A stretch of 64,000 nt of DNA from positions 186,001-250,000 of the IMG/VR virus record IMGVR_UViG_3300020810_001156. One strand, written 5' to 3'. The notes under the pieces are model-generated. The model was not told the DNA's origin and searched no databases. It saw only the letters and a program-made list of their open reading frames with translations. This document shows, piece after piece, positions 2-60,800 of this stretch. A program made the translations under genes and the position numbers. Numbering within the stretch: position 1 is the first letter of the stretch; every line of letters begins with the position of its first letter.

Positions 2-1648
2 TTCATTGATACCGCTCGAGGTATTTGTCACGCTGGGCATGTACCTTACGAAGATTTCGTTTATTCTTCAAAGTATTTGGAAGGAGCACTTTTATGTTAC
101 CTAAAAAGAAAGGGTATTGTTGCACCTAACAAACCAGCTGATAGAAGAGAACGAATGGAAGCTCTTAAAGAGAATAAAGAAGAGAAGTTTATCGGAGCAT
201 ATGTAAAAGCACCAATTGTTGGTAAATATGATTGGATATATGATTTGGATTTAACTTCCCTATATCCATCTATTATTATGACTATCAATATTTCACCTGA
301 AACTAAGATGGGTAAAATTGAAGATTGGAGTGCTGAGGATTATGTTAAAGATAAAAGGGATAGTTGGGTTATCAATGGTGATACAATCACACAAGAAAAT
401 CTAAAAAAGTTTTTTGAAAGAAGTAAGTTTTCAGTTGCATCAAATGGTGTTCTTTATAGAACGGATAAAGTGGGTTGTATTCCTGATATTTTGGACTTGT
501 GGTTCTCTCAGAGGGTTGAGTTCAAAAACAAAATGAAAGAATATGGAAACAGTGGAGAAAAAGAAAAATACGAATGGTATAAGAAACGTCAGTTGGTTCA
601 GAAAATTCTACTTAATTCTTTATATGGTGTGCTTGGCCTTCCTGCCTTTAGGTTCTATGATGTTGATAATGCTACCGCTGTTACCACAACGGGACAGACA
701 GTTATTAAATCAACTGCGGATATGGCTAACATCAAATACAATAAGGAGCTTGGTACTCCTAATGCTGACTCTAATATATACATTGATACTGATTCTGTAT
801 TTTTCTCAGCAGCTCCACTTTTAGACCATAGGATTCCAAATTGGAAAGATAATGAGCAAGATACTATTGCTGGATTCGTAAATGATATTGCAGGTGAAAT
901 GCAAGATTATCTAAATGATTTTTATGATATTCTTGCTGAAAAAGTATTCAATGTAGATAAGGATAAACATCGATTTGAGATTAAGAAAGAATATGTTTCT
1001 AAATCAGGTATTTGGATTGCTAAGAAACGATATGCACAATGGATTATTTCCGATAATGGTGTACCTGTTGATAAGTTGGATGTAAAAGGATTAGATGTTG
1101 TTCGTTCATCATATCCAGCAGCATTTAGAAAGTTTATGAGTGAGGTTCTGATTGAAATCCTTAGAGGTGATACTGAAGAACAACTTACGAATAAAGTGTA
1201 TGATTTTAAAAAGAATCTACCAAATATGGATGTGGTGAAGATTGCAAAAGCTGGAGCTGTGAAAAACTTATCAAAGTATATGCCAAAGAAAAAGAATCAA
1301 ACAGCTATGTTCCAATTTCCATCTGGTTGTCCGGCGCATGTTAAAGCAGCAATTGCATATAATCAATTACTAAAACACTTTGGGGTGGAAAATCAATACG
1401 AACCCCTAAAGGATGGTGATAAGATTAAGTGGGTTTATCTAAAACAAAATCCATATGGGTTGGATGGTGTAGCTATGAATGGTTACAATGACCCACCTCA
1501 GATTATGGAACTGATTAACACTTATATCAATCACGATAAAATCTTCGAAAGAGAACTTCTAAAAAAATTAGAAGATTTCTACGGAGCATTAGATTGGGGA
1601 GAAGTTTTATCCTCAACAAAAACAGCTGAGAAATTTTTCTCATTTTAA
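2..1648 (+). CDS. Family B DNA polymerase (T4 gp43-like), 5' truncated by the window edge
   Basis: Motif A DLDLTSLYPSII, motif B KILLNSLYG, motif C YIDTDS, KKRY and KGLDVVRS. The frame is open from position 2, so the track start at 77 is not the real start. Confidence 0.97.
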   Translation, partial: FIDTARGICHAGHVPYEDFVYSSKYLEGALLCYLKRKGIVAPNKPADRRERMEALKENKEEKFIGAYVKAPIVGKYDWIYDLDLTSLYPSIIMTINISPETKMGKIEDWSAEDYVKDKRDSWVINGDTITQENLKKFFERSKFSVASNGVLYRTDKVGCIPDILDLWFSQRVEFKNKMKEYGNSGEKEKYEWYKKRQLVQKILLNSLYGVLGLPAFRFYDVDNATAVTTTGQTVIKSTADMANIKYNKELGTPNADSNIYIDTDSVFFSAAPLLDHRIPNWKDNEQDTIAGFVNDIAGEMQDYLNDFYDILAEKVFNVDKDKHRFEIKKEYVSKSGIWIAKKRYAQWIISDNGVPVDKLDVKGLDVVRSSYPAAFRKFMSEVLIEILRGDTEEQLTNKVYDFKKNLPNMDVVKIAKAGAVKNLSKYMPKKKNQTAMFQFPSGCPAHVKAAIAYNQLLKHFGVENQYEPLKDGDKIKWVYLKQNPYGLDGVAMNGYNDPPQIMELINTYINHDKIFERELLKKLEDFYGALDWGEVLSSTKTAEKFFSF

Positions 1649-1712: not shown

Positions 1713-2408
1713 ATGGAAAAAGTAAAATTCGATGGTTTCATCAATCGATACAATCTCGGTGGAGAGGTTGAATCAGTAATGGTAAAATCAGAAGGTTCTG
1801 ACCTTTCAGTTAGAATGATTTCTGATGACAAAACTCTTTTAGGGGATGTAACTTCAGCTAATACTGATTTCCCAAATGGGGAATTTGGTATTTATACTAC
1901 ATCTCAGTTGAAAGGGTTATTGAGTGTGTTAGATAACACTATTGAAGTAGAAGAAGTAACTGGAGCACTAAAGTTCTCTGATAAGGGAACAAAGATGCAG
2001 TATATGTTAGCAGCACCATCAGTTATCCCAGCGGTACCTGATTTAAAAGCACTTCCTCCCTTCAATGTAGAAGTAACACTAAACGATGAGTTCGTAAACA
2101 AATTTATCAAATCTAAGGGAGCATTAGCAGATGCTGATACTTTCACATTCACTTGTAAAAATAACAATGGAGAGATTATCTTAGGTTATTCTTCAATCAA
2201 TTCAAATAGAATTTCTATCTCAGTTGATTGTACTTGTGATGGTGATGTTGAACCAATCGCATTCTCTGCGAAATATCTAAAAGCTATCCTATTGGCTAAT
2301 AAAGGTTCAAATTCTTCTTCATTGAAGATTTCATCACAAGGTTTGGCACATCTAAACTTTGTTGATGGAGATTATACCAGCAATTACTATCTCGTAGAAA
2401 TTAAGTAA
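1713..2408 (+). CDS. DNA sliding clamp (gp45/PCNA-like)
   Basis: 231 aa, beta-rich two-domain pattern, C-terminal YTSNYYLVEIK. Lies between the polymerase and the clamp loader. Confidence 0.7.
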   Translation: MEKVKFDGFINRYNLGGEVESVMVKSEGSDLSVRMISDDKTLLGDVTSANTDFPNGEFGIYTTSQLKGLLSVLDNTIEVEEVTGALKFSDKGTKMQYMLAAPSVIPAVPDLKALPPFNVEVTLNDEFVNKFIKSKGALADADTFTFTCKNNNGEIILGYSSINSNRISISVDCTCDGDVEPIAFSAKYLKAILLANKGSNSSSLKISSQGLAHLNFVDGDYTSNYYLVEIK

Positions 2409-2410
2409 TT

Positions 2411-3628
2411 ATGAGTTTTTGGGATACTGAACCAGCAAAGCCAGAATTCATCTTTGAGGAGGAAAAAAGAAAACTCAAAGAGAATATGGATTATCTAATG
2501 ACAATGAGTGTTGAAGAACAAACTCTATACAAAAAGTGGGTAGAGTTGCAAGAATCTTCAATGCTTAGAGATAAATCCCAAATCGCTACTCTTTATGATA
2601 CTCAATGGAAACCAACTGATATCAACAATAAAGAACTAACCATCAAAGAAATTGAAGAGTTAGAACCTTATGTTGAAATTGTAGAGGATTCAGCTGAAGC
2701 TACAAAGTGGACTTATCTTAGAAAGATGATTCACACTATGAGTTGGACAGCTAATCCTGGTCGAAATGTGAAATTGTTTATCAAAGATAAGAAGAGTGGT
2801 AAATTGTTAGGTTTGGTATCACTAGCCTCAGATGTTACTTCTATGAAAGTAAGAGATGATTACATCGGATGGACTAAAGAAGATAAATTCAAAAAGGGAA
2901 AGTTGAACTACACAACTATCGCTTCCACCATCGTTTGTACCCAACCTTTAGGTTACAACTTTTTAGGTGGTAAACTCACCGCAATGATGACTACAGTTCC
3001 AGAAGTTAGAAATTATTGGAAAGAAAAGTATGGGCAAACATTGATAGGTGTAGGTACAACTTCCCTTTATGGAATTCATTCACAATATAATGGTATTCCG
3101 CATTTTAAAACTTTAGGAGAATCCGCTGGTAAGATTGCAATCAAACCTGATGATGAGTTCTATGACCCTTGGCACCAATGGTTGAAGGAAAATAGAGCAG
3201 ATTGGTACGAAAATGCAATCACTAACGAAAGAATCAGAAATGGTAAAAATATGGGAACTGGTGAAGGTGCTAGTGGACCTGTAAGTGGTATCAAACAAAA
3301 GATTCTTTCTCAGATTCTAAGAGAATGTGGTATCAAAGCATCTGATTATCATCACGGATTTAAAAGAGGTGTATATCTTGCTATGATGTACGAAAACGGA
3401 CCTGAGTTCCTCCGTTCAGAAATTGAAGAATCGGAACTTGTTATGAAGAAAAAGTTTGAAGATGGTGTAGATTACATCAACAATTGGTGGAAAAAACAAG
3501 CAATCAAACGATATTCTAAGTTGCATGATGAAGGTAGATTAAAACCTGAAGATTTATTCTATATCGATGGTATTGGTAAAGATTGGGAAACCTTCAAATC
3601 AGAAAGATTAAAAGAAGTAGGTAGATAA
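2411..3628 (+). CDS. DUF4338 / Druantia DruA-like protein
   Basis: GRNVKLFIKD..GKLLGL, RDDYIGW, PLGYNFLGGKL and TTSLYG..SQYN match the DruA/DUF4338 signature. Confidence 0.75.
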   Translation: MSFWDTEPAKPEFIFEEEKRKLKENMDYLMTMSVEEQTLYKKWVELQESSMLRDKSQIATLYDTQWKPTDINNKELTIKEIEELEPYVEIVEDSAEATKWTYLRKMIHTMSWTANPGRNVKLFIKDKKSGKLLGLVSLASDVTSMKVRDDYIGWTKEDKFKKGKLNYTTIASTIVCTQPLGYNFLGGKLTAMMTTVPEVRNYWKEKYGQTLIGVGTTSLYGIHSQYNGIPHFKTLGESAGKIAIKPDDEFYDPWHQWLKENRADWYENAITNERIRNGKNMGTGEGASGPVSGIKQKILSQILRECGIKASDYHHGFKRGVYLAMMYENGPEFLRSEIEESELVMKKKFEDGVDYINNWWKKQAIKRYSKLHDEGRLKPEDLFYIDGIGKDWETFKSERLKEVGR

Positions 3629-3638
3629 AATATAAATT

Positions 3639-4586
3639 ATGGGATTTTTTGAAGAAACTAATAATGAACAAGTAGATAACTCACTTTGGGTAGAATCATA
3701 TCGCCCAACTACTTTAGAAAATTATGTGGGTAATGAACACTTAAAAGAAAAAGTAAGTGGTTATTTAGAAACAGGTGATGTACCTCACTTACTTCTTTAT
3801 GGTAGAGCTGGTACTGGTAAGACAACTCTTGCCAAATTGATTGTAAAATCATTAGATTGTGATTATATGGTAATCAACGCATCTGATGAGAACAATGTGG
3901 AAACTGTAAGAAATAAAGTAAAAGGATTCGCATCATCGATGGGATTCAAAAAGTATAAAATCATTATCTTAGATGAGTTTGATTATATGTCTCAGAACGC
4001 ACAAGCGATTCTTAGAAATCTTATGGAAACATTTTCACAACATTGTAGATTCATTTTGACTTGTAACTATGTTGAGAAAGTTATTGACCCTATCCAAAGT
4101 AGATGTCAAACTTTCCAAATCATTCCTCCTACTAAAAAGGATGTAGCAGTTCAAATCTCAAAGATTCTTAAAAATGAAGAAGTAAAGTTTGAACCAAAAG
4201 ATTTAGTTCCAATTATTGATGCTGGATATCCTGATATTAGAAAGATTATCAATACTTGTCAATTAAACTCAATCAAAGGTGAGTTGAAAGTAGATACTCA
4301 AAACCTTTTAGAGAATGATTACAAAATGAAAGTTTTGGATATCCTAAAATCTTCGGATGATAAGAGAAACAAATATGTGAATATGAGACAAACTATCATT
4401 GATAGTAGAGTAACTGATTTCTCAGAATTATTTACTCTCTTATATGAAAAGGTAGATGAGTACGCTCCACAAAACACAGCGAATGTAATCATCGCTCTTT
4501 CTGAAGGACAGAATAAACACTTCAACGCTATTGATAAAGAGATACCAATGGCAGCAACTTTGATTGAAATTTTAAACTTAATATAA
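3639..4586 (+). CDS. Clamp loader AAA+ subunit (RFC small subunit / T4 gp44-like)
   Basis: LWVESYRP, Walker A GRAGTGKT, INASD, Walker B ILDEFD and the SRC motif. Confidence 0.95.
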   Translation: MGFFEETNNEQVDNSLWVESYRPTTLENYVGNEHLKEKVSGYLETGDVPHLLLYGRAGTGKTTLAKLIVKSLDCDYMVINASDENNVETVRNKVKGFASSMGFKKYKIIILDEFDYMSQNAQAILRNLMETFSQHCRFILTCNYVEKVIDPIQSRCQTFQIIPPTKKDVAVQISKILKNEEVKFEPKDLVPIIDAGYPDIRKIINTCQLNSIKGELKVDTQNLLENDYKMKVLDILKSSDDKRNKYVNMRQTIIDSRVTDFSELFTLLYEKVDEYAPQNTANVIIALSEGQNKHFNAIDKEIPMAATLIEILNLI

Positions 4587-4897
4587 TGGCAAATATAATT
4601 GGTAAAGGTGGTAGTAAACCACAAAAAGCATCAGAACAAAGTACACAACAATCACCAAAGATTGATTTAGGTAAATCAACTCCCGTTGTTTGTGCTCATT
4701 GTGGATATGATGTATTTGTAGATGGTGCTAAATTTAGAAAAATCTCAAAACTAATCACTGGTACTCCGCAAGATGTAGTTGTACCAATTGAAGTAATGTT
4801 ATGTGGTAATTGTGGTGAGATTTGTGAAGAATTACTACCAGAACAAATGAAAGTATTAAACGAAATTGATAAAAGAAATTCTGAGGAGAATGCCTAA
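4586..4897 (+). CDS. Small zinc-ribbon protein
   Basis: CAHC...CGNC pairs; translationally coupled to its neighbours. Confidence 0.6.
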   Translation: MANIIGKGGSKPQKASEQSTQQSPKIDLGKSTPVVCAHCGYDVFVDGAKFRKISKLITGTPQDVVVPIEVMLCGNCGEICEELLPEQMKVLNEIDKRNSEENA

Positions 4898-5339
4898 ATC
4901 GTTGTTTGACCACATAAAAGCAATTACCAATGAGCAAGACCCTAAGTATTGGGATAAGTTAGAGGAAGCTGATAAGAAAACATTTTCTAACTATATGGTA
5001 CTTCGTTTTCTATCTATGAAATATGAGTGGGTAGAAACCATTGCAGCAGTTCAACCATATTTACAGGAAGTTCCTCCTAAAGCAATGTATTTGGCTATGA
5101 TTGATTTACTTCCAAAGGGTAGGCACTTTATGAAGTATATGAAAGCTAAAACTGCCGATAAATACGAAGGTTGGTTAGTAGAGTTGGTAGCTAAACATTA
5201 TGAAACCTCAAAGTTAGAAGCAGAAGATTACTTAAAGATTCTATATGCTAGTAGAACTGGTAAGGAAAGAATCAAACAATTATCAGAGGATTATGGAACT
5301 GACCCAAAGATAATTAAGAAATTAAAATTAAAAATATAA
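4890..5339 (+). CDS. Clamp loader small subunit (T4 gp62-like)
   Basis: FSNYMVLRFLSM, LPKGRHFMKYMK and ELVAKHY..S..EAEDYLKIL fit the gp62 pattern. Start moved to the ATG at 4890. Confidence 0.75.
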   Translation: MPKSLFDHIKAITNEQDPKYWDKLEEADKKTFSNYMVLRFLSMKYEWVETIAAVQPYLQEVPPKAMYLAMIDLLPKGRHFMKYMKAKTADKYEGWLVELVAKHYETSKLEAEDYLKILYASRTGKERIKQLSEDYGTDPKIIKKLKLKI

Positions 5340-5349
5340 TTGAGAAAAG

Positions 5350-5381
5350 TTTGGAAATCCCAAACTTTTTTCGTATATTTG
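5350..5381 (+). promoter_or_regulatory. Bacteroidota-type promoter with an inverted repeat over the -33 box
   Basis: TTTG-N20-TATATTTG with the palindrome AAAAGTTTGG-aaatc-CCAAACTTTT. Confidence 0.8.
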
Positions 5382-27914: not shown

Positions 27915-29525
27915 ATGAGAACCTACAATGTAATACTCAAAAAAGGTGTAGATTATGAATCGTTTTGGGATGATATGGAAAATGAAAACGATGGGGGTAA
28001 TCTTTATATCCCTAATCGTAGAGTAGATTCTCCTAACCTTAGACCAGATTCACAAAGACAAACTTGGTACACTCTTTCGGATGAAGAAGCTGAAACTGTA
28101 AGAAATGATGAAAGAGTTCTTGCAGTTGAAATTCCACCCGAAGATAGGGATGATATCGTAATTGGACATCATGCAATCCAAGAGGGTGTATTTACCAAAA
28201 CAACTTCTGATAGTGGTAATTATCAAAATTGGGGATTAATAAGAACTTTATCTAAATCAAATAATTATGGTAGTTCAAATACCTCACCAACTACTGAATA
28301 TCCATATTCATTAACTGGTAAGGGGGTTGATGTTGTAATTCAAGATAGTGGTATTCAAATAGACCATCCAGAATGGGCAGATAGATTTGAATCGGTAGAT
28401 TGGGATACATGGGGTGCTTTTACACAATCATCAAATCACGATAGAGATTATGATGGACATGGTTCACATTGTGCTGGTATTGTAGCAGGTAAAACATTTG
28501 GGTATGCTAAAAAAGCAAAAGTATATCATCAAAAGATAAGTGGATTAGAAGGTAGTGGTGATAGTGGAACTGGTATTTCACCAACCTATGCATTTGATGC
28601 TATTAAAGGTTGGCATAATGCTAAATCAGTTGACCCAAATACTGGGTATGTTAGACCAACTGTGGTAAATATGAGTTGGGGTTATCTGAGAACATTTACA
28701 AATGCTCAAATATCAAACATAAATTATAGAGGTACTGATTATAGTGGTACTGATATTGATACTACAACTGAAAGAGAAAACAATTACGGATTGATGTATT
28801 CATTGTATTCAGTATCAGGTCCAACATATGCTAGTAATTTAAGAATAGCATCGGTTGATACTGATATTGAAGAGTTGTTAGAAGCGGGTGTTCATGTGTT
28901 TGTTGCTGCTGGAAATAGGAGTAATAAAGTAGATGAGAGTGGTGGTGCGGATTATGATAATAATTATACACACACATCATCGGGTACAACTTACTATCAC
29001 AGAGGTTCTTCTCCATATGGTGATGCAGGGCAAGATGGAACTGGACCAAGAGCAATCATAGTTGGTAATATGGATTCATCAGTACATGATACCACAACTG
29101 ATAGAAAAGCAACATCATCGGAAACTGGACCTGGTGTTGATATCTATGCACCTGGTACAAATGTTATGAGTGCAACTTCTAATACAAATAAGTGGGGAAG
29201 TGGTTCTCAAAATTATTATTTGAATTCATCATTTAAGCAAACTAATATATCTGGTACATCTATGGCATCTCCTCAAGTTGCAGGTGTTGCTGCATGTATT
29301 TTAGAATTATATCCACAATGGACACCATCTCAATTAAAACAATGGTTACTGGATAATGCAGGTTCTGCAATCTTAAATACTGGTACTGATAATGATTGGA
29401 CAAATGATAGAAGTTTGAAAGGTGGAGCAGAAAAAGTATTACATTTACCATTTACTTCATCAGAACCTGCAAAAATAAGTGGTTTCGATAATTTAACCTT
29501 TAACATAAAAATCAAAGAACAATAA
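27915..29525 (+). CDS. Subtilisin-like S8 serine protease
   Basis: Catalytic triad motifs QDSG, HGSHCAG and SGTSMASPQVAG; oxyanion motif AAGN. Confidence 0.93.
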   Translation: MRTYNVILKKGVDYESFWDDMENENDGGNLYIPNRRVDSPNLRPDSQRQTWYTLSDEEAETVRNDERVLAVEIPPEDRDDIVIGHHAIQEGVFTKTTSDSGNYQNWGLIRTLSKSNNYGSSNTSPTTEYPYSLTGKGVDVVIQDSGIQIDHPEWADRFESVDWDTWGAFTQSSNHDRDYDGHGSHCAGIVAGKTFGYAKKAKVYHQKISGLEGSGDSGTGISPTYAFDAIKGWHNAKSVDPNTGYVRPTVVNMSWGYLRTFTNAQISNINYRGTDYSGTDIDTTTERENNYGLMYSLYSVSGPTYASNLRIASVDTDIEELLEAGVHVFVAAGNRSNKVDESGGADYDNNYTHTSSGTTYYHRGSSPYGDAGQDGTGPRAIIVGNMDSSVHDTTTDRKATSSETGPGVDIYAPGTNVMSATSNTNKWGSGSQNYYLNSSFKQTNISGTSMASPQVAGVAACILELYPQWTPSQLKQWLLDNAGSAILNTGTDNDWTNDRSLKGGAEKVLHLPFTSSEPAKISGFDNLTFNIKIKEQ

Positions 29526-41238: not shown

Positions 41239-42450
41239 ATGACAGATTTTAAAATTGGTTTTGTAAAGAATGAAGTTTATAAGGTGGAGGCCTTTGGTAA
41301 CTCATTTAAACTGATTGATACTAAAGGTACGAAAGTTGGTACTTTGGGTATCGGAACTGGTACTCGTAAGAGCGCCTATGAGAATGGAGAAGCTCTCCAA
41401 GCTTATGTTCAAAAGAATGGTAAGAAAGTTTACCGAAAAGTTGGTATGGATGTTTACAACAACTTAGTTGCTCCGATGGCTACCGAAAATGGTGGTGTTC
41501 AATTCGAAGATAAATCGGACCATACGGCTATTAAAGATTTTATCCACAAAGGTTCAGTAAACCTTAAACCAACTGAGTTGGTGATGACTGAACTAAAGTG
41601 GAAGTATCTCATCAGAAGTGCGGTGAGAGCTAAGAATATTATGATGACAGGACCTGCTGGTTGTGGTAAAACTATGGCCGCTAAAGCATTGGTTAAAGCA
41701 CTTGACCGTCCTGATTTTTACTTCAACTTAGGAGCAACGCAAGACCCGCGAGCTACCCTAATTGGTAACACACAATTCGATTCTAAGAATGGTACTTACT
41801 TCTCAGAATCATCATTCATCAAAGCAATCAAAACTCCAAACGCAGTTATCCTATTGGATGAGTTGAGTAGAGCTCACCCTGATGCTTGGAACATTTTGAT
41901 GACCGTTTTAGATGGTGGACAACGATACATCCGATTGGATGAAGCAGAAGGTTCACCAATTGTGAAAGTTGCTGAAGGAGTTACCTTCATCGCTACGGCT
42001 AACATTGGTAATGAATATACATCGACCAGAGTTATTGACCGAGCGATTCTTGACCGATTCGTTACCATTGAAATGGATGTTCTAAATGATGAGCAAGAAT
42101 TTGGTTTGTTGAAGTTTATGTTCCCTGAGGTGAACGAAGAAGATTTAAAAGCTGTAGCGGAAATCGCACACCATACTCGAACTCAATCGATGAGTGATAG
42201 TGGTAAAGTTACAGCAATGGTTTCCACTCGTGCTAGTGTTGAGATGGCTGGATTGATTTATGATGGTTTCGATTTATTCGAAGCAGCTGAGATTTCAATC
42301 TTCCCATTCTTCTCTAACGATGGTGGAGTTGATTCTGAAAGAACTTACATTAAGCAGTTAGTTCAGAAGTATGTGAAAGATGAGGGTGAAGCTCTCTTCA
42401 ATGAGCAGGAAACCGAAACGAATTCGGAAGATGAGATTCCGATGTTTTAG
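41239..42450 (+). CDS. MoxR/CbbQ/CobS-type AAA+ ATPase
   Basis: GPAGCGKT, LLDELSR, IATAN, D.AILDRF and STR. Confidence 0.92.
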   Translation: MTDFKIGFVKNEVYKVEAFGNSFKLIDTKGTKVGTLGIGTGTRKSAYENGEALQAYVQKNGKKVYRKVGMDVYNNLVAPMATENGGVQFEDKSDHTAIKDFIHKGSVNLKPTELVMTELKWKYLIRSAVRAKNIMMTGPAGCGKTMAAKALVKALDRPDFYFNLGATQDPRATLIGNTQFDSKNGTYFSESSFIKAIKTPNAVILLDELSRAHPDAWNILMTVLDGGQRYIRLDEAEGSPIVKVAEGVTFIATANIGNEYTSTRVIDRAILDRFVTIEMDVLNDEQEFGLLKFMFPEVNEEDLKAVAEIAHHTRTQSMSDSGKVTAMVSTRASVEMAGLIYDGFDLFEAAEISIFPFFSNDGGVDSERTYIKQLVQKYVKDEGEALFNEQETETNSEDEIPMF

Positions 42451-45693: not shown

Positions 45694-47034
45694 ATGATAA
45701 CACCCTTTTCGGTATTAGATACTCGAACAAAGGAATGGAAGAAAAAGAAAGAAGAGTGGATTGCTACCTACGGAATTCAATCTGAGTTAGGTAGGGAGGA
45801 TACCCAATCGAAAACCCAATTTTGGGATTCTCCAACTAACGTTTCTATTTTTGACCCGGTTCTTTGTGAAGTAATGTACGATTGGTTCGTACCGAAGGGT
45901 GGAAAAATCCTAGACCCATTTGCTGGTGGAAGTGTAAGAGGAATCGTAGCTGAAGAAATGGGGTACAAATATGTAGGTATCGACCTTTCTAAAAAACAAA
46001 TCCTTGCAAATCAAAAACAAAGTTCAAAACCCTTTTGGATTGATGGAGATGCTGATAAAGTTCTCTTTAATTTAGAAGGTGGATTCGATTTTGTATTTAC
46101 CTGCCCTCCTTATTATGATTTAGAAGTGTATTCGGATTCTCCTTATGATTTATCGAATATGAAAGAAAAACAATTTGATGATAAATTGGATTCTATCATT
46201 TATAAATCTGCTCTGAAGTTGAAAGAGAACCGATTTTTTGGGATTGTGGTAAGTGAGGTGAGAAATCCTTCAACGACTGGGAATTATTCCATAGGTAATT
46301 ATAGAGGATTGGTTTGGAAAACAATAAAGATGTGTGAATCACACGGATTGAAGTTCTATAATGATATGATATTATTCAATTCCCAACATCAGGCATCTCG
46401 AGTAGGTAAAACTTACTTTGAAAGAAATAGAAAAATACCATCAGTACATCAAAATGTATTGATATTTGTTAAGGGGAATCCCGATATTGCTACCGAAGAA
46501 ATCAAAGGTGGTGAGTTTGAATGTCAAGTAAAGGGTACAAAATACTTGACTTTCAGACACGCTGCTATTTCAATCGACCCAAACAAATTAGTTGCTTCTG
46601 AAGTTAAAAGAAGATGTGTAAGTAGAAAATCAAAATATAAAGATTGGCAGATAATTGGTGAGGAGACTCGACCAGAGATAAAATATGTTATAGGAGATAT
46701 TCCATTTGAATCACCTTTACAAGTTTTGGAAGTTATTCCTGAATTAACTGAATCACAATGTAGAAATTACTTTGAATCAAACTCTAAGAAGTTTCAACAT
46801 TGGAAAAGAGTGAATCCATCGGATTGGAATATATCTTATAAACAAATGGAGGATTTATGGAATTTATCTGATAAAGCAGGTGGAATAAGTATTTACTCCG
46901 AAACCATTCAATGTGGTGATAAAAAATTCATTTCAGTTAACGAAGCTGCAAAGGAATTTGGAATAAGTGGAGAACGAGTTAGACAAAAGTTAAGGTCTGA
47001 TAATTATAAAGACTGGAAATATTTGGATAATTAA
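45694..47034 (+). CDS. DNA amino-methyltransferase with C-terminal NUMOD1/HTH-like repeats
   Basis: LDPFAGG and TCPPY; three C-terminal repeats ending in K.W. Confidence 0.8.
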   Translation: MITPFSVLDTRTKEWKKKKEEWIATYGIQSELGREDTQSKTQFWDSPTNVSIFDPVLCEVMYDWFVPKGGKILDPFAGGSVRGIVAEEMGYKYVGIDLSKKQILANQKQSSKPFWIDGDADKVLFNLEGGFDFVFTCPPYYDLEVYSDSPYDLSNMKEKQFDDKLDSIIYKSALKLKENRFFGIVVSEVRNPSTTGNYSIGNYRGLVWKTIKMCESHGLKFYNDMILFNSQHQASRVGKTYFERNRKIPSVHQNVLIFVKGNPDIATEEIKGGEFECQVKGTKYLTFRHAAISIDPNKLVASEVKRRCVSRKSKYKDWQIIGEETRPEIKYVIGDIPFESPLQVLEVIPELTESQCRNYFESNSKKFQHWKRVNPSDWNISYKQMEDLWNLSDKAGGISIYSETIQCGDKKFISVNEAAKEFGISGERVRQKLRSDNYKDWKYLDN

Positions 47035-47071: not shown

Positions 47072-49048
47072 ATGAAAAAAATATTGGTAATTATGTTGAG
47101 TATGGTGAGTATTTCCCTATCTGCTCAACAAAGTGATACGACTATCGTATTAGATGATGTAGTAATAACTGCTACTAGAAGTGAGATAAGTTTGGAAGAT
47201 TCACCCGTACCAACGGAAGTGATTGGAAAGAAAGAGATTGAAGAACTAAATTTAATTACGATGCAAGACCTCCTTAATTTAAAAGGATTTGTTGCACCGA
47301 TGAAAAGTGGAGGTTTCCAATTAAGAGGATTATCTTCCGAATATGTTTTAGTAATGATTGATGGAGTTCCAATCGCAGGTAGAGAAAGTGGTGCATTAGA
47401 TATCTCGAATATCAACCTTGCAAATGTGGAAAGAGTTGAAATTGTAAAAGGTTCAATGTCTGCACTTTGGGGTAACCATGCAATTGGTGGTGTAATCAAC
47501 ATCATTACAAAGAAGAGTGGAGAACCATCTATAATGTTGAATACACAATATGGAACAAACAACACATCATTAGTTGGATTAACTTCAACAGTGGGTAAAG
47601 ATAAATTTAAGAACATATCTAAGATTACATTAGGAAGTTCAGATGGTTTTGATATCGACCCATTAACTTATGGTCAAAATCAATTACCATTTAAGTTGTT
47701 GAATATTACCAATAGAACTACTTACGATGATGGAACGAACCAATACTCATTAGGATTAACTCACTTAGGAAAAACATCCGAAGGTGAAACTGTAACTGAA
47801 ACAAATACTCAGGGGCAATTAGTACCAGTTGATGAGGTAAACGAATCCCAAAACTTTATTGTTGATTTGAACTACAAAAGAAGTTTTGGTAAATATGTGA
47901 GTGAGATTAAAGTATCTAATTCAAACTTCAGTAACTCAAACAAATCTTCTTTTGAATATTTCGGACAACAAGTAGTTCAGTTAGATGAGAGTGACCAAAA
48001 CATTTTCCAACCTGAGATGATTAACAATTACAATTGGAATTCTAAAAACTCAACTACATTTGGATTTGGTTATAGAGGACACGATTACGATACTGAAAGA
48101 TATGGTGGTGATAAATCTCTAAACTCTTACTTTGGATATGTTCAACATTATCTAAACTTAGATAAACTAAATTTAGTAGTTGGTGGTAGATACGATAACT
48201 ATTCAGATTTTGGAAACAACTTCTCACCAAAAGTATCTGCAACTTATGATTTGGGGAAATTCAAATTGAGTTCATCGGTTGGTTATGGATTCAGAGTACC
48301 TGATTTTAGAACCTTATACATTAACTATGGTGGATTCTCATCTGGGTATTGGGTATTAGGTTCGTATAACATTGAAGAACAAATCAATTTTTATTCTCAA
48401 CAAAATCTAATTGCATTTGTATCTTATGGATTAGAAGATATTACTCAACTAAGTCCTGAAACTTCTATCTCATATGATTTTGGTGTATCGTATAAATTAA
48501 ATGAGAGTAGTAAAGTAGGATTAAACTTATTTAGAACCAATACAACTGATTTGATTGAATCAGTTCTTGCTGGAATGTTTGTAAACCAAACTTTACTTTT
48601 TGGATACACAAATATCTCAGAAGCAACATTTACAGGTTTAGAGTTTGAAACTTTGATTCAAAAAGATAGATTTAGATTTGATGGTTCTTATCAGTATTTA
48701 GAAACTGAAGCAAATAAAGCAGATGGAACTGAATTCTTTTTGGGTGAAAGACCTAAACATTTAGTTAACCTTGCAACTACTTATACATTGAAGAATGGTT
48801 TATCATTAACTTTAAATGGAGTTCATAAATCAGAGTACTTCTTTAGAGATGTTGATAGAAGTGGAACTCAGGACGCAAATGAGTTTGTACCTTCTCACAC
48901 ATTGTTGAATACTTTGATAAGTTCTCCTGTTGTTAAGAATATGACAGTTGGTGTTGGTGTTAACAATATTTTAGATTTTACTAATGTAGAGTATCTAAAA
49001 CAACAAAATGGTAGAACCATTTTTGGAAAAGTAACTTATAAATTTTAA
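47072..49048 (+). CDS. TonB-dependent outer-membrane receptor
   Basis: Signal peptide, TonB box LDDVVITATR, plug motif VERVEIVKG.MSALWG..AIGGVINIITK, GGRYD, and C-terminal VTYKF. Confidence 0.95.
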   Translation: MKKILVIMLSMVSISLSAQQSDTTIVLDDVVITATRSEISLEDSPVPTEVIGKKEIEELNLITMQDLLNLKGFVAPMKSGGFQLRGLSSEYVLVMIDGVPIAGRESGALDISNINLANVERVEIVKGSMSALWGNHAIGGVINIITKKSGEPSIMLNTQYGTNNTSLVGLTSTVGKDKFKNISKITLGSSDGFDIDPLTYGQNQLPFKLLNITNRTTYDDGTNQYSLGLTHLGKTSEGETVTETNTQGQLVPVDEVNESQNFIVDLNYKRSFGKYVSEIKVSNSNFSNSNKSSFEYFGQQVVQLDESDQNIFQPEMINNYNWNSKNSTTFGFGYRGHDYDTERYGGDKSLNSYFGYVQHYLNLDKLNLVVGGRYDNYSDFGNNFSPKVSATYDLGKFKLSSSVGYGFRVPDFRTLYINYGGFSSGYWVLGSYNIEEQINFYSQQNLIAFVSYGLEDITQLSPETSISYDFGVSYKLNESSKVGLNLFRTNTTDLIESVLAGMFVNQTLLFGYTNISEATFTGLEFETLIQKDRFRFDGSYQYLETEANKADGTEFFLGERPKHLVNLATTYTLKNGLSLTLNGVHKSEYFFRDVDRSGTQDANEFVPSHTLLNTLISSPVVKNMTVGVGVNNILDFTNVEYLKQQNGRTIFGKVTYKF

Positions 49049-51841: not shown

Positions 51842-52037
51842 ACGCTGGAATAGGGAAATGAAAAGGTATCGTATCATTGAACACAAACATCGGGATAAAT
51901 CTGTGTTCATTGTTGAGTGGAATGATAGATGGTTTTTAGGATTGTGGGGAAGATGGCATGGTAAATTTCAGAGTTTAAAAATTGAAGAAGCTATTTCTAA
52001 AATACAAAGATTAGTACACATTAAAATAAATAAATGA
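51828..52037 (+). CDS. Hypothetical protein
   Basis: 69 aa, translationally coupled. Confidence 0.5.
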   Translation: MKKDKRWNREMKRYRIIEHKHRDKSVFIVEWNDRWFLGLWGRWHGKFQSLKIEEAISKIQRLVHIKINK

Positions 52038-52936
52038 GAATAGTAGTTACAGGCGGTTGTGGGTTTATTGGTTCATCTTTTGTAAATCTTATAAATAAAG
52101 TTCCAAATACTGAAATAGTTGTTATAGATAAATTAACCTATGCAGCTAATCCATTTTTAATTTCCAAAGATATACCTCTTATTAAAAAAGATATTTGTGA
52201 TATCACTTTAGATGATATTGGATATGCTGATTATATTGTAAACTTTGCTGCTGAATCTCATGTTGATAATTCAATCTCAAATGGATTACCTTTTGTGAAA
52301 ACTAATGTAGAAGGTACATTCAATATGTTAGAGGTTGCTAGAAAAATTCCTAACCTAAAGAAGTTCATTCAAATATCTACTGATGAGGTTTATGGTGATA
52401 TGGAAAGTAGAAATATTATGGAAGCTAATGAAAACACATCATTAGAACCATCCTCTTATTATTCAGCTACTAAAGCAGCAGCTGACCATTTAGTTGAATC
52501 TGCTGGTAGAACTTATGGTTTACCTTATTTAATTACGAGAACTTGTAACAATTATGGTGTAAATCAACACCACGAAAAATTCTTACCTACAATAGCTAAA
52601 TCAATCAAAGAAGATAAACCAATTCCTCTTTATGGAGATGGTAAACAAATGAGAGAGTGGATTTGGGTTGAAGATAATGTTCAATTGATTTATGATTTGA
52701 TGATATCACAAAACGGAATATGGAATATTGGTAGTGGAGATACTTGGACTAATAGAAGTATCGTTCAACAAATTGGAGTGATTCTAAATAAAAAAGTAAA
52801 GTTAGAGCATGTTGAAGATAGATTAGGACATGATAGAAGGTACTCAATAAATTTCAGTAAATTGATGCACTTCAAAAATAGCTATAACATAACCACAAAA
52901 AATTTAGAAAAATTTCTTACAGAAACATTTGGATAA
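52034..52936 (+). CDS. rfbB: dTDP-glucose 4,6-dehydratase
   Basis: GGCGFIG, DKLTYA, AAESHVD, STDEVYG, YSATK and RLGHD.RY. Confidence 0.93.
   Translation: MRIVVTGGCGFIGSSFVNLINKVPNTEIVVIDKLTYAANPFLISKDIPLIKKDICDITLDDIGYADYIVNFAAESHVDNSISNGLPFVKTNVEGTFNMLEVARKIPNLKKFIQISTDEVYGDMESRNIMEANENTSLEPSSYYSATKAAADHLVESAGRTYGLPYLITRTCNNYGVNQHHEKFLPTIAKSIKEDKPIPLYGDGKQMREWIWVEDNVQLIYDLMISQNGIWNIGSGDTWTNRSIVQQIGVILNKKVKLEHVEDRLGHDRRYSINFSKLMHFKNSYNITTKNLEKFLTETFG

Positions 52937-59171: not shown

Positions 59172-60800
<1,629 letters not shown>

What the first reader, a model, noticed from the sequence alone, without database searches (positions are those of the whole stretch)
2411..3628. DruA/DUF4338-like protein embedded in the phage replisome operon
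Seen: the gene sits between the sliding clamp and the clamp loader with 2-10 nt gaps, and no other Druantia genes are in the window. Known: DruA is named from a bacterial anti-phage system, and DUF4338 has been linked to Mom-like GNAT-fold DNA-modifying enzymes. Inference: this is a replication-coupled phage DNA base-modification or anti-restriction enzyme rather than a defence gene.
Basis: partly seen in the sequence, partly recalled or inferred. Interest (0 to 1): 0.65.

Follow-up and report, generated by a model that had tools for sequence, protein, structure and literature searches.

The report
Orphan DruA-type GNAT in phage replisome operon
A large marine phage carries, wedged between its sliding-clamp and clamp-loader genes, a well-conserved stand-alone enzyme of the DruA/DUF4338 family whose predicted fold is an acyltransferase most like the DNA-modifying protein Mom of phage Mu, so it probably marks DNA chemically, but this is untested.

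Summary
ORF 2411-3628 (+, 405 aa) lies 2 nt after the sliding-clamp gene and 10 nt before the clamp-loader ATPase gene. It scores 78.5 bits on Pfam DruA (cut-off 27). The whole 252.6-kb phage genome has no DruE-type domain.

The AlphaFold model is confident (pLDDT 93) and has a GNAT acyltransferase core. In two exhaustive PDB searches the best match is Mu Mom (8bv8; Z 10.0 and 11.4), only about 1.3 above generic GNATs. By sequence it is not a Mom-family member.

The gene is accessory: the nearest isolate, Microcystis phage Mel-JY01, has the same gene block without it. It is under purifying selection (dN/dS 0.08). The family is large and mostly viral. Relatives are fused to ParB_N, UDG-type, DUF3102, HNH-like and GIY-YIG/NUMOD3 modules, to a DndFGH-like context protein and to IS4 transposases. 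Most of these partners act on DNA.

In T4-like phages the gene recurs in the replication/recombination module, but in three different slots that follow three clades.

Most likely it is a self-sufficient nucleic-acid (DNA) acyl- or aminoacyl-transferase made together with the replisome, the counterpart of an orphan methylase. Donor, target base and any coupling to replication are inferred only. DruA-like genes in cyanophages were already noted in the literature.

The parts
2411..3628 (+). DruA/DUF4338-family gene, 405 aa (P0001)
   Evidence: ORF; Pfam DruA 78.5 bits, PADLOC DruA 64 bits, phrog_19197; model pLDDT 92.9, pTM 0.89; dN/dS 0.08
2411..2452 (+). N-terminal tail, residues 1-14, with the 'SFWD' aromatic motif
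   Evidence: Residues 1-5 have pLDDT under 50. An FFD[IL]-like motif occurs in only 9 of 107 full-length representatives, those nearest the query. Its role is unknown; the clamp-docking test gave no verdict.
2453..2659 (+). N-terminal helical domain, residues 15-83
   Evidence: Five helices in the model. It was not covered by the structure matches, which span residues 79-351, so its fold is unassigned.
2660..3430 (+). GNAT-fold core, residues 84-340
   Evidence: VIA search of 48,161 chains: Mom 8bv8_B Z 10.0 (whole model) and 11.4 (core model). In the core-model search 101 chains reach Z>=8, and the 50 listed rows are GNAT-type acyltransferases.
2942..2977 (+). beta4-alpha3 loop 'QPLGYNFLGGKL', residues 178-189, at the place of GNAT motif A (cofactor phosphate-binding loop)
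   Evidence: Q178, P179, G181, G186, G187, K188 and L189 are conserved in 90% or more of 84 diverse sequences. The motif is kept in cyanophage and pelagiphage homologs. Its placement after strand 168-176 follows the DSSP of the model.
3056..3088 (+). End of beta5 and the alpha4 region, 'TTSLYGIHSQY', residues 216-226, with invariant Y226
   Evidence: T216, T217, S218, L219 and G221 are nearly invariant and Y226 is invariant. This is the position of the GNAT alpha4 tyrosine, which is Y149 in Mom. The equivalence is inferred from topology.
3140..3364 (+). About 75-residue helical insertion between beta6 and beta7, residues 244-318, followed by conserved R319-G320
   Evidence: DSSP of the model, with a disordered loop at 277-293. 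R319 is conserved in 82 of 84 sequences and G320 is invariant. Mom has its essential insertion at the same topological place. The only local sequence echo is 'RGVYL' (E 0.041, not significant).
3431..3625 (+). C-terminal helical region, residues 341-405, with the basic helix 'WWKKQAIKRYSKL' and a conserved terminal Arg
   Evidence: W360 and R367 are nearly invariant, and K361 is K/R in 71 of 84. The protein ends in ...VGR here and in pelagiphages and in ...IIR in cyanophages.
2..1648 (+). C-terminal part of family-B DNA polymerase (gp43-like), ending ...AEKFFSF
   Evidence: Pfam DNA_pol_B 1.3e-42, phrog_262 2e-120; sequence
1713..2408 (+). Sliding clamp (gp45-like)
   Evidence: phrog_223 'DNA polymerase processivity factor' 8e-13. 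It is 44% identical to the gene in the same position next to P0122.
3639..4586 (+). Clamp-loader ATPase (gp44-like)
   Evidence: phrog_168 2e-79; Pfam AAA and DNA_pol3_delta2
4586..4897 (+). 103-aa ORF of unknown function between the two loader genes
   Evidence: No family hit. It is conserved in position among relatives. Mel-JY01 has an 81-aa ORF there.
4866..5339 (+). Small clamp-loader subunit (gp62-like)
   Evidence: phrog_225 1.6e-16; Pfam Phage_clamp_A 1e-5, just under the cut-off
5341..5373 (+). Terminator-like hairpin (14-bp stem and T run) closing the clamp/loader block
   Evidence: Scan. It is a consensus match only. No intergenic terminator lies between the clamp, the DruA-like gene and gp44.

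Best explanation
The gene encodes a stand-alone viral member of the DruA/DUF4338 family. It has three parts: an N-terminal helical domain, a GNAT-fold catalytic core with a large helical insertion between beta6 and beta7, and a C-terminal helical region with a basic helix.

Shown here:
- Family membership and the GNAT fold.
- Strong purifying selection.
- The gene is accessory: it is inserted in an otherwise conserved polB-clamp-loader block.
- It has no room for signals of its own (2-nt and 10-nt gaps; terminator-like hairpin only after gp62), so it is very probably made together with the replisome proteins.

Inferred:
- It works alone, like an orphan DNA methylase or like Mom.
- It takes an activated acyl or aminoacyl group. 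The donor could be an acyl-CoA bound at the conserved QPxGxN..GGK loop, or a charged tRNA as in Mom.
- It transfers that group onto a base of DNA, marking newly made phage DNA so that host nucleases that read unmodified DNA no longer cut it.
- The conserved S140, R148, K188, T216-S218, Y226 and R319 would line the active cleft between beta4 and beta5.
For: Family and fold:
- Pfam and PADLOC DruA hits.
- Confident models.
- The best solved structural neighbour in two exhaustive searches is the DNA-modifying GNAT Mom: Z 10.0 with 172 of 202 residues aligned, and Z 11.4 with 167 of 202.

Links to DNA:
- Relatives are fused to ParB_N (8 of 28 long representatives), a UDG-superfamily domain, DUF3102, GIY-YIG/NUMOD3 and HNH-like Cys motifs.
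- The domain also heads the large first protein of DndFGH-like operons and IS4/Tn5-type transposases.
- The Atlas clusters are 97% and 80% viral.

Self-sufficiency:
- The gene travels singly in very different phage and mobile-element contexts.
- No Druantia partner occurs in the genome.

Likely activity:
- The motif-A-like loop and the TTS...Y motif are nearly invariant across 84 sequences of 27-50% identity and in isolates.
- dN/dS is 0.08, against 0.105 for the clamp and 0.077 for gp44.

Expression context:
- Clamp|X|gp44 is kept in the fetched close relatives: clamp adjacent in 68 of 70, gp44 adjacent in 64 of 79.
- polB-clamp-X is kept down to 50% identity.
- A separate cyanophage clade sits between gp44 and gp62.
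Against: - No biochemical datum exists for any DruA-family protein (literature searches).
- There is no detectable sequence similarity to Mom: no PF25680 hit, and hhalign finds nothing.
- Mom leads generic GNATs by only about 1.3 Z, and Foldseek does not rank it in the top 50.
- By topology, Mom's essential R111, S124, D149 and R151 have no evident counterparts.
- The protein is charge-neutral (pI 7.1), whereas Mom is very basic (pI 9.9).
- The gp45-gp44-gp62 region of T4-like phages also takes up unrelated accessory genes such as denV, speD and purS. The position may therefore reflect a permissive insertion site rather than function.
- GNATs act on many substrate classes.
Confidence: 0.45

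Rival explanations
1. It is an acyltransferase for something other than DNA: a host or phage protein (for example a replisome or nucleoid protein), an aminoacyl-tRNA, or a small molecule such as a polyamine or nucleotide. It would serve host takeover or metabolism.
For: The structure searches return protein, aminoglycoside, polyamine and tRNA-related GNATs only about 1.3 Z below Mom. The protein is charge-neutral. A motif-A-like loop is typical of acyl-CoA-using GNATs with many acceptor types.
Against: The fusion partners and system contexts are DNA-related throughout: ParB_N, UDG, HNH, GIY-YIG, DndFGH-like operons and transposases. The best solved neighbour is a DNA modifier.
Confidence: 0.2
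2. It is a counter-defence decoy: a phage copy of a defence-system component (DruA or DndF-type) that poisons or titrates the host system rather than acting as an enzyme on phage DNA.
For: It is homologous to a defence protein, with PADLOC DruA models matched over most of their length. Phages are known to carry homologs of defence components (general knowledge).
Against: The presumed catalytic motifs are nearly invariant across over a thousand 50%-identity clusters of mostly viral proteins. A pure decoy would not need them. No evidence was gathered that the hosts carry Druantia I.
Confidence: 0.1
3. It is a phage-carried defence or superinfection-exclusion gene that marks or senses foreign DNA to the benefit of the resident phage.
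For: The family name and the defence contexts in bacteria.
Against: It is a single gene without any effector partner. It sits in a lytic T4-like replication operon and is conserved as strongly as the replication genes.
Confidence: 0.1
4. It is a non-catalytic DNA-binding accessory factor of replication or recombination that uses a GNAT-like scaffold, like the half-domain at the N-terminus of IS4-type transposases.
For: The N-terminal half of the domain occurs fused to Tn5/IS4 transposases, where catalysis by it is unlikely. The gene is placed next to clamp, loader or gp46/47 genes.
Against: The full domain keeps nearly invariant Gly-rich loop and Ser/Thr/Tyr motifs at canonical GNAT active-site positions. 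The gene is absent from the closest isolate with the same replisome block, so it is not a core replication factor.
Confidence: 0.1

Closest known systems
DruA of Druantia type I (Pfam PF14236, formerly DUF4338; PADLOC DruA)
   Same: The sequence family is the same: 78.5 bits on Pfam and 64 bits on a PADLOC DruA model, covering positions 87-369 of 407. The overall size and three-part layout are similar.
   Different: There is no DruB-E; no DUF1998/MZB domain occurs in the whole phage genome. It is encoded by a lytic-type T4-like phage inside the replisome operon. It belongs to clusters that are mostly viral. DruA's own biochemical role is unpublished, as far as the searches show.
Mom of phage Mu (Pfam PF25680; PDB 8bv8), a GNAT that transfers glycine from Gly-tRNA to N6 of adenine in dsDNA (PMC13219725)
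   Same: GNAT fold. Mom is the best solved structural match in two exhaustive searches (Z 10.0 and 11.4). Both have an insertion between beta6 and beta7 with a conserved Arg(-Gly) just before beta7. Both are single stand-alone phage genes.
   Different: There is no sequence-level similarity. No evident counterparts exist for the essential R111, S124, D149 and R151. The protein has 405 aa against about 240, with extra N- and C-terminal helical domains and a roughly 75-residue insertion against about 35. It is neutral rather than strongly basic. It keeps a Q-x-x-G-type loop. It lies among early/middle replication genes, whereas mom is a late gene.
Cyanophage and pelagiphage homologs: 'T4-like GC 1216 putative cytoplasmic protein', S-SCSM2R ORF152 'methylcarbamoylase mom', the S-PRM1 'DruA-like' protein of the Phold preprint, and Mosig 'DUF4338'
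   Same: They belong to the same family (26-36% identity) with the same core motifs. They are also placed in the T4-like replication/recombination module.
   Different: They form different clades and occupy different slots: gp44|X|gp62, or beside gp46/47. Cyanophage members have SP instead of SD at 140-141, lack G320, end in IIR and lack the N-terminal aromatic motif. The window's phage has no psbA, and its polymerase is only about 31% identical to theirs.
ParB_N-fused and other orphan DNA methyltransferases of phages and plasmids (functional analogy; my own knowledge)
   Same: These are stand-alone modification enzymes without a cognate nuclease. A sister clade of this protein carries the same ParB_N front end.
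   Different: The fold and the chemistry differ: GNAT acyl transfer rather than SAM methyl transfer. The phage also has a separate N6/N4 methylase gene at 45694-47034.
DUF4338 GNAT domain at the N-terminus of DndF-type proteins (PMC10853773)
   Same: The domain family is the same. Loci of that layout were found here in Paenibacillus and Plesiocystis.
   Different: There the domain is one module of a multi-gene DNA-restriction system with a large FtsK/HerA-type ATPase. Here it is a free-standing protein.

Membership tests
DruA/DUF4338 protein family (PF14236) | Score above the curated Pfam gathering threshold over most of the domain | tested here: met
   78.5 bits against a cut-off of 27; residues 82-335 match profile positions 46-296 of 297. 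PADLOC DruA gives 64 bits.
DruA/DUF4338 protein family (PF14236) | Family motifs conserved (PGR, SD..R.xYIGW, QPxGxNxxGGKL, TTSLYG..SQY, RG, WWKK..KRY) | tested here: met
   The positions are invariant or 90% or more conserved in 84 sequences and are present in the query.
Druantia type I defence system | DruA encoded together with DruB, DruC, DruD and the large DruE helicase (DUF1998/MZB domain) | tested here: not met
   No MZB/DUF1998 match occurs in the whole 252.6-kb genome. No Druantia model hits the ten largest ORFs of the window. The flanking genes are clamp and clamp loader.
GNAT superfamily | Fold beta1-alpha1-alpha2-beta2-beta3-beta4-alpha3-beta5-alpha4-beta6-beta7 | tested here: met
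   The models have pLDDT 93. With the core model, 101 of 48,161 chains reach Z>=8, and the 50 listed rows are GNAT-type acyltransferases.
GNAT superfamily | Motif A loop Q/R-x-x-G-x-G/A after beta4 that binds the CoA pyrophosphate | tested here: inconclusive
   Q178-P-L-G181-Y-N183 followed by G186-G187-K188 is nearly invariant. The last position is N rather than G/A, and the loop is longer than usual. No coordinates were available to inspect a pocket.
GNAT superfamily | Binds and uses an acyl-CoA (or another activated acyl donor) | not testable with these tools
   This needs binding or activity assays.
Mom family (PF25680) | Match to the Mom profile, or profile-profile similarity | tested here: not met
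   Mu Mom hits PF25680 at 253 bits. P0001 has no hit to it at E<=0.01. hhalign of 84 family sequences against 38 Mom sequences gives probability under 1%.
Mom family (PF25680) | Essential residues R111, S124, D149 and R151 (2026 numbering; R101, S114, D139, R141 in the annotated protein) | tested here: inconclusive
   A topological mapping from the DSSP of the model and the two family alignments puts T173/I174, G186-K188 and T217-G221 at those places. Only the generic alpha4 Tyr (Y226, equivalent to Y149) is shared. No residue-level superposition could be computed, because coordinates are not exposed.
Mom family (PF25680) | Essential HTH-like insertion between beta6 and beta7 | tested here: inconclusive
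   An insertion lies at the same topological place but is about 75 rather than about 35 residues long. It is unrelated in sequence apart from the conserved R(G) before beta7.
Mom family (PF25680) | Gly-tRNA-dependent modification of N6-adenine in dsDNA | not testable with these tools
   This needs expression with nucleoside LC-MS, or an in-vitro assay as in PMC13219725.

The most novel reading that the evidence does not exclude
The viral DruA-like proteins are a second, much larger and independent family of GNAT-fold DNA base acyl- or aminoacyl-transferases beside Mom. They would be abundant in marine T4-like phages and made with the replisome, so a still unknown acyl-type DNA modification would be common in ocean phage DNA. 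By extension, DruA in Druantia I and the DndF-type fusions would be the 'self-marking' or sensing enzyme of those systems.
Probability: 0.35. Interest if true: 0.8.

Novelty: new member of a known kind. Interest (0 to 1): 0.5.

Why it matters
No member of the DruA/DUF4338 family has a published activity. The viral branch is large: 1,079 clusters at 50% identity and thousands at 90%, mostly from marine metagenomes. It sits in the genomes of abundant ocean phages.

If these enzymes put an acyl-type mark on DNA, three things would follow:
- A new, widespread DNA modification would be added to the known ones.
- It would help explain how these phages evade host nucleases.
- It would give a testable handle on the unexplained first gene of Druantia type I and on the GNAT heads of DndF-type proteins.

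The present window adds a clear natural comparison: the same replisome block with and without the gene. It also supplies a short list of residues to mutate.

Tried and rejected
- Clamp docking. I tested whether the disordered N-terminal 'SFWD' tail (residues 1-85) binds the phage clamp. The job returned no verdict (score 0.17, mark 0.34), so it counts neither way.
- Sequence search of PDB with the protein and with the family profile: no hit.
- hhalign of the family against Mu Mom, as a single sequence and as a 38-sequence profile, with default and permissive settings. Only insignificant local matches appeared.
- Foldseek of the whole model against PDB gave nothing at E<=1e-3. With the core model it gave malonyl-CoA decarboxylase and ordinary GNATs, and Mom was not in the top 50.
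- tblastn against plasmids: no match.
- The search for related loci with the 84-sequence alignment failed for lack of a conserved stretch. It worked with a 10-sequence alignment.
- 'Relatives' cannot be drawn for a viral record.
No read-level or expression evidence was obtained, and read laying was not used.
- Literature: no paper combines DruA with GNAT. The YprA and CoCoNuT papers say nothing on DruA itself. The MetaGPA study does not list DUF4338 or Mom in its text or in the seven held supplements.
- P0146's 231-aa upstream neighbour is not a clamp.
- I considered that the downstream glycosyltransferases might glycosylate DNA together with this enzyme. I set this aside because they open a long sugar/LPS-type cluster (GT2s, UDP-GlcNAc 2-epimerase, DegT aminotransferase) beyond a terminator-like hairpin.
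- No other genetic code was needed.
Full report
OBSERVATION

The window is bases 186,001-250,000 of a 252,603-bp viral record rated complete. ORF 2411-3628 (+) runs from ATG to TAA and encodes 405 aa.
- It starts 2 nt after the stop of the gene at 1713-2408 and ends 10 nt before the gene at 3639-4586.
- The upstream genes are the C-terminal part of a family-B DNA polymerase (Pfam 1.3e-42; phrog_262 2e-120) and a processivity factor (phrog_223 8e-13).
- The downstream genes are the clamp-loader ATPase (phrog_168 2e-79), a 103-aa ORF, and the small loader subunit (phrog_225 1.6e-16).
- A terminator-like hairpin with a 14-bp stem follows the small loader subunit at 5341-5373. No intergenic terminator lies between the clamp, the ORF and the loader.

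The ORF scores 78.5 bits on Pfam DruA (PF14236, cut-off 27), 64 bits on a PADLOC DruA model, and 2e-32 on phrog_19197, a family of unknown function.

No MZB/DUF1998 domain, the mark of DruE, occurs anywhere in the phage genome. None of the ten largest ORFs of the window hits a Druantia model.

IS IT A WORKING GENE?

The word search found 3,074 relatives. The top 120 are 82-95% identical and come from marine metagenome contigs of up to 265 kb.

The exhaustive search of 50%-identity representatives found 1,079 clusters at E<=1e-3 and 145 at E<=1e-30. I used that costly search because the family scans left the function open and the close relatives were too alike for a fold or a conservation analysis.

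I compared the window's copy with close viral-contig relatives. The median dN/dS is 0.081 for this gene, 0.105 for the clamp and 0.077 for the loader ATPase. The gene is thus constrained like its essential neighbours.

STRUCTURE

An 84-sequence alignment (27-92% identity to the query) gave an AlphaFold2 model with mean pLDDT 92.9 and pTM 0.89. The layout is:
- a short disordered tail (residues 1-14)
- a helical domain (15-83)
- a beta/alpha core (84-340)
- a helical C-terminal region (341-405)

The core has the GNAT strand order. An insertion of about 75 residues, with helices and a disordered loop at 277-293, lies between the sixth and seventh strands.

Foldseek against PDB gave nothing at E<=1e-3 for the whole model. 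The exhaustive aligner, run against 48,161 chains, ranked the crystal structure of phage Mu Mom first (8bv8_B; Z 10.0, rmsd 4.0, 172 of 202 residues). Generic GNATs followed at Z 8.7 or less.

Because the model is just over 400 residues, I folded residues 76-345 alone (pLDDT 93.0) and searched again. Mom was first once more (Z 11.4, 167 residues), ahead of three GNATs at 10.1. 101 chains reached Z>=8, and the 50 listed rows are GNAT-type acyltransferases. Foldseek with this core model gave malonyl-CoA decarboxylase (4e-4), NatD and SpeG, and did not place Mom in the top 50.

The GNAT fold is therefore solid. The special closeness to Mom is reproducible with one aligner, but the margin is small.

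RELATION TO MOM

The 2026 study of Mom shows that it is a GNAT. It moves glycine from Gly-tRNA(Gly) to N6 of adenine in double-stranded DNA, after which the adduct rearranges. R111, S124, D149 and R151 are needed, and an HTH-like insertion (residues 175-209) is essential. Mom is a dimer. The 2020 study uses numbers 10 lower, which match the annotated protein I fetched.

By sequence the two families are unrelated as far as the tools can see:
- Mom belongs to PF25680 (253 bits), and the query has no hit there.
- Profile-profile comparison of 84 family members with 38 Mom homologs gives probability below 1%.
- The only echo is 'RGVYL' (residues 319-323) against the same five letters in Mom's insertion (E 0.041). 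In cyanophage members only the Arg remains.

I placed the two family alignments on the GNAT topology by hand, since no coordinates are exposed. The generic alpha4 tyrosine is shared (Y226 here, Y149 in the annotated Mom). Mom's Arg on beta4, Ser at alpha3 and the Asp-x-Arg after beta5 have no evident counterparts.

This family instead keeps its own nearly invariant set:
- G117-R118
- S140(-D141) and R148 with I152-G153-W154
- Q178-P179-x-G181 and G186-G187-K188-L189
- T216-T217-S218-L219 and G221
- Y226
- R319-G320
- W360 and R367

. The stretch QPxGxN..GGK lies where GNATs have their cofactor phosphate-binding loop and looks more canonical than Mom's.

The protein is neutral (pI 7.1, net charge 0), whereas Mom is strongly basic (pI 9.9, net +17).

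In short, it works from the same scaffold as Mom and has an insertion in the same place, but it is not a Mom-family member.

WHAT THE RELATIVES SAY

In the metagenomic structure atlas the nearest clusters are a stand-alone DruA cluster (136 members, 97% viral, TM 0.92) and a ParB_N-DruA fusion cluster (235 members, 80% viral, TM 0.85). BFVD adds homologs in giant viruses: Faunusvirus, Yasminevirus and Dasosvirus.

Of the 28 representatives of 500 aa or more, 8 carry ParB_N. One each carries a UDG-superfamily domain, DUF3102, GIY-YIG with NUMOD3, and a weak HobA match. Three more have HNH-like cysteine motifs.

A scan of prokaryote genomes found 77 loci.
- In Paenibacillus curdlanolyticus and Plesiocystis pacifica the domain is part of a large protein. 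ORFs of about 500 aa and an FtsK/HerA-type ATPase of about 1,500 aa follow it. This is the DndFGH-like layout for which DUF4338 was described as a GNAT head of DndF.
- In several alphaproteobacterial genomes, five to seven copies per genome carry only the first half of the domain fused to a Tn5/IS4-type transposase.

Most of the identified partners act on DNA. Distant stand-alone members sit in unrelated contexts: arrays of small early-type ORFs, an element with serine recombinases, and a region with Vsr, an Eco57I-type enzyme and a C5 methylase. This argues that the protein does its job alone.

SYNTENY

In the 80 closest viral contigs the order clamp-X-loader is kept. The clamp is adjacent in 68 of 70 loci with enough flank. 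gp44 is adjacent in 64 of 79 by my gap criterion. At 50% identity (P0122) the order polB-clamp-X persists, with the clamp 44% identical, but other genes follow.

The nearest isolate by polymerase is Microcystis phage Mel-JY01 (53.5% identical; all others about 32% or less). It has polB, a clamp-sized gene, the loader ATPase, a small ORF and the small loader subunit in the same order, but nothing between clamp and loader. It also gave no hit with the protein. The gene is therefore an accessory insertion.

In six isolated cyanophages the homolog lies between gp44 and gp62. In S-B68 and in the pelagiphages Mosig and HTVC008M it lies beside gp46/gp47.

A maximum-likelihood tree separates three groups:
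- a cyanophage clade (support 100/100, with S-B68 nested inside)
- a pelagiphage clade (100/99)
- the query's clade (97/93), which groups weakly (84/86) with the ParB_N-fused clade

. Slots follow clades. Placement in the replication/recombination module therefore arose or shifted more than once.

This is compatible with selection for expression alongside replication. However, the same region of cyanophage genomes also holds unrelated accessory genes such as denV, speD and purS, so a permissive insertion site is an equally simple reading.

The direct test of replication coupling was docking of the N-terminal tail on the clamp. I prompted it because the polymerase ends in AEKFFSF and this clade begins with SFWD or FFD[IL]. 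It returned no verdict.

MECHANISM

Shown:
- family membership and the GNAT fold
- nearly invariant residues at the canonical GNAT active-site elements (end of beta3, the beta4-alpha3 loop, the end of beta5, alpha4, the start of beta7)
- single-gene mobility and mainly DNA-related fusion partners
- co-linear, gap-free placement in the replisome block
- purifying selection

Inferred: the protein binds an activated acyl or aminoacyl donor at the Gly-rich loop. The donor could be an acyl-CoA, or a charged tRNA as in Mom. The protein transfers the group to a DNA base, using the insertion and the basic C-terminal helix to hold the DNA. This marks phage DNA as it is made and blunts host nucleases. 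In that reading it is the acyl-transfer counterpart of an orphan methylase. I put this at 0.45.

Rivals:
- an acyltransferase for protein, tRNA or a small molecule (0.2)
- a decoy of a defence component (0.1)
- a phage-borne exclusion gene (0.1)
- a non-catalytic DNA-binding factor (0.1)

COMPARISON AND NOVELTY

The family and its presence in phages are already on record:
- Pfam names it DruA.
- Aravind's group calls DUF4338 a GNAT.
- The Phold preprint reports DruA-like folds in six Synechococcus phages.
- The S-SCSM2R paper annotates its copy as 'methylcarbamoylase mom' from structural similarity. That label goes beyond the evidence, given the failed sequence tests above.

What this analysis adds:
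- the size and mostly viral nature of the branch
- the natural empty site
- the three slots and three clades
- the fusion census
- the half-domain in transposases
- the finding that the solved Mom structure is the nearest neighbour although Mom's catalytic residues are not evidently shared

The item is a new member of a known, biochemically uncharacterised kind. Interest is moderate now and would be high if a DNA adduct is found.

LIMITS

No coordinates were available, so residue equivalences with Mom rest on topology. No read or expression data could be obtained. The N- and C-terminal domains were not searched on their own. No alternative genetic code was used, and nothing resembling human sequence was met.

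Noticed in passing
window 47072-49048 (+): A 658-aa phage ORF with the Plug and beta-barrel domains of a TonB-dependent outer-membrane receptor (3e-21 and 3e-35). This is an unusual auxiliary gene that points to a Gram-negative host. The phage has no psbA.
   Followed up: no
window 45694-47034 (+): A 446-aa ORF with an N6_N4 DNA methylase domain (1.8e-11) and PADLOC type II methyltransferase hits. The phage therefore carries at least one conventional DNA-modifying enzyme besides the DruA-like gene.
   Followed up: partly
window 6536 to about 21967 (+), and 52034-52936: A long, tightly packed sugar/LPS-type cluster lies just after the replisome block. It holds two GT4 glycosyltransferases (one with a weak 'GT4 in conflict systems' hit), two GT2s, a UDP-GlcNAc 2-epimerase, a small GNAT and a DegT-type aminotransferase. 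A NAD-dependent epimerase/dehydratase lies further on. Whether any of these acts on DNA rather than on cell-surface sugars is open.
   Followed up: partly
window 59175-60800, 41239-42450, 27915-29525 (+): A GroEL-type chaperonin (1e-75), a CobS/MoxR-like AAA ATPase, and a subtilase-like protein (PADLOC subtilase 2e-20) are encoded by the phage.
   Followed up: no
L158:9698-11920 and L162:9668-11983 (alphaproteobacterial assemblies; 5-7 copies per genome): Multi-copy ORFs of 740-771 aa join the first half of the DruA domain (Pfam profile positions 52-178) to Tnp_DNA_bind or DDE_Tnp_1. This looks like an IS4/Tn5-type transposase with a half-GNAT head.
   Followed up: partly
L146:9407-19198 (Paenibacillus curdlanolyticus YK9) and L149:9479-19168 (Plesiocystis pacifica SIR-1): DruA-domain proteins of 698 and 1,215 aa are followed by ORFs of about 500 aa and by FtsK/HerA-type ATPases of about 1,500 aa. 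This is a DndFGH-like layout rather than DruABCDE, so a Pfam 'DruA' hit alone does not indicate Druantia.
   Followed up: partly
P0140 (640 aa), P0240, P0241, P0247 and P0268 (representatives): Further fusions of the DruA-like domain: an N-terminal UDG-superfamily domain (P0140, assigned from its N-terminal sequence; the scan counts one member without naming it), HNH-like cysteine motifs, and C-terminal GIY-YIG with NUMOD3.
   Followed up: partly
BFVD hits: Structural homologs occur in giant viruses: Faunusvirus 469 aa (E 1.5e-19), Yasminevirus 1,260 aa and Dasosvirus 1,157 aa. The family therefore reaches the Nucleocytoviricota.
   Followed up: no
window 3611-3625 (residues 401-405) and 2411-2425 (residues 1-5): The protein ends exactly in a conserved Arg across clades: ...VGR here and in pelagiphages, ...IIR in cyanophages. 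Only the query's clade begins with an aromatic 'SFWD' or 'FFD[IL]' motif. Neither feature is explained.
   Followed up: partly
L096 (Microcystis phage Mel-JY01, PP395634.1 73198-78233): The nearest isolate by polymerase (53.5% identical) is a freshwater Microcystis phage with the same polB-clamp-loader order. The window's phage is only about 31% identical in polymerase to marine T4-like cyanophages, so it belongs to a poorly sampled lineage.
   Followed up: partly
L004 (S-SCSM2R ORF152) and L092 (S-CREM1): Public annotations of homologs differ: 'methylcarbamoylase mom', 'iron-binding protein', 'putative cytoplasmic protein'. None rests on an assay. The 'mom' label is not backed by sequence similarity to the Mom family.
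   Followed up: yes
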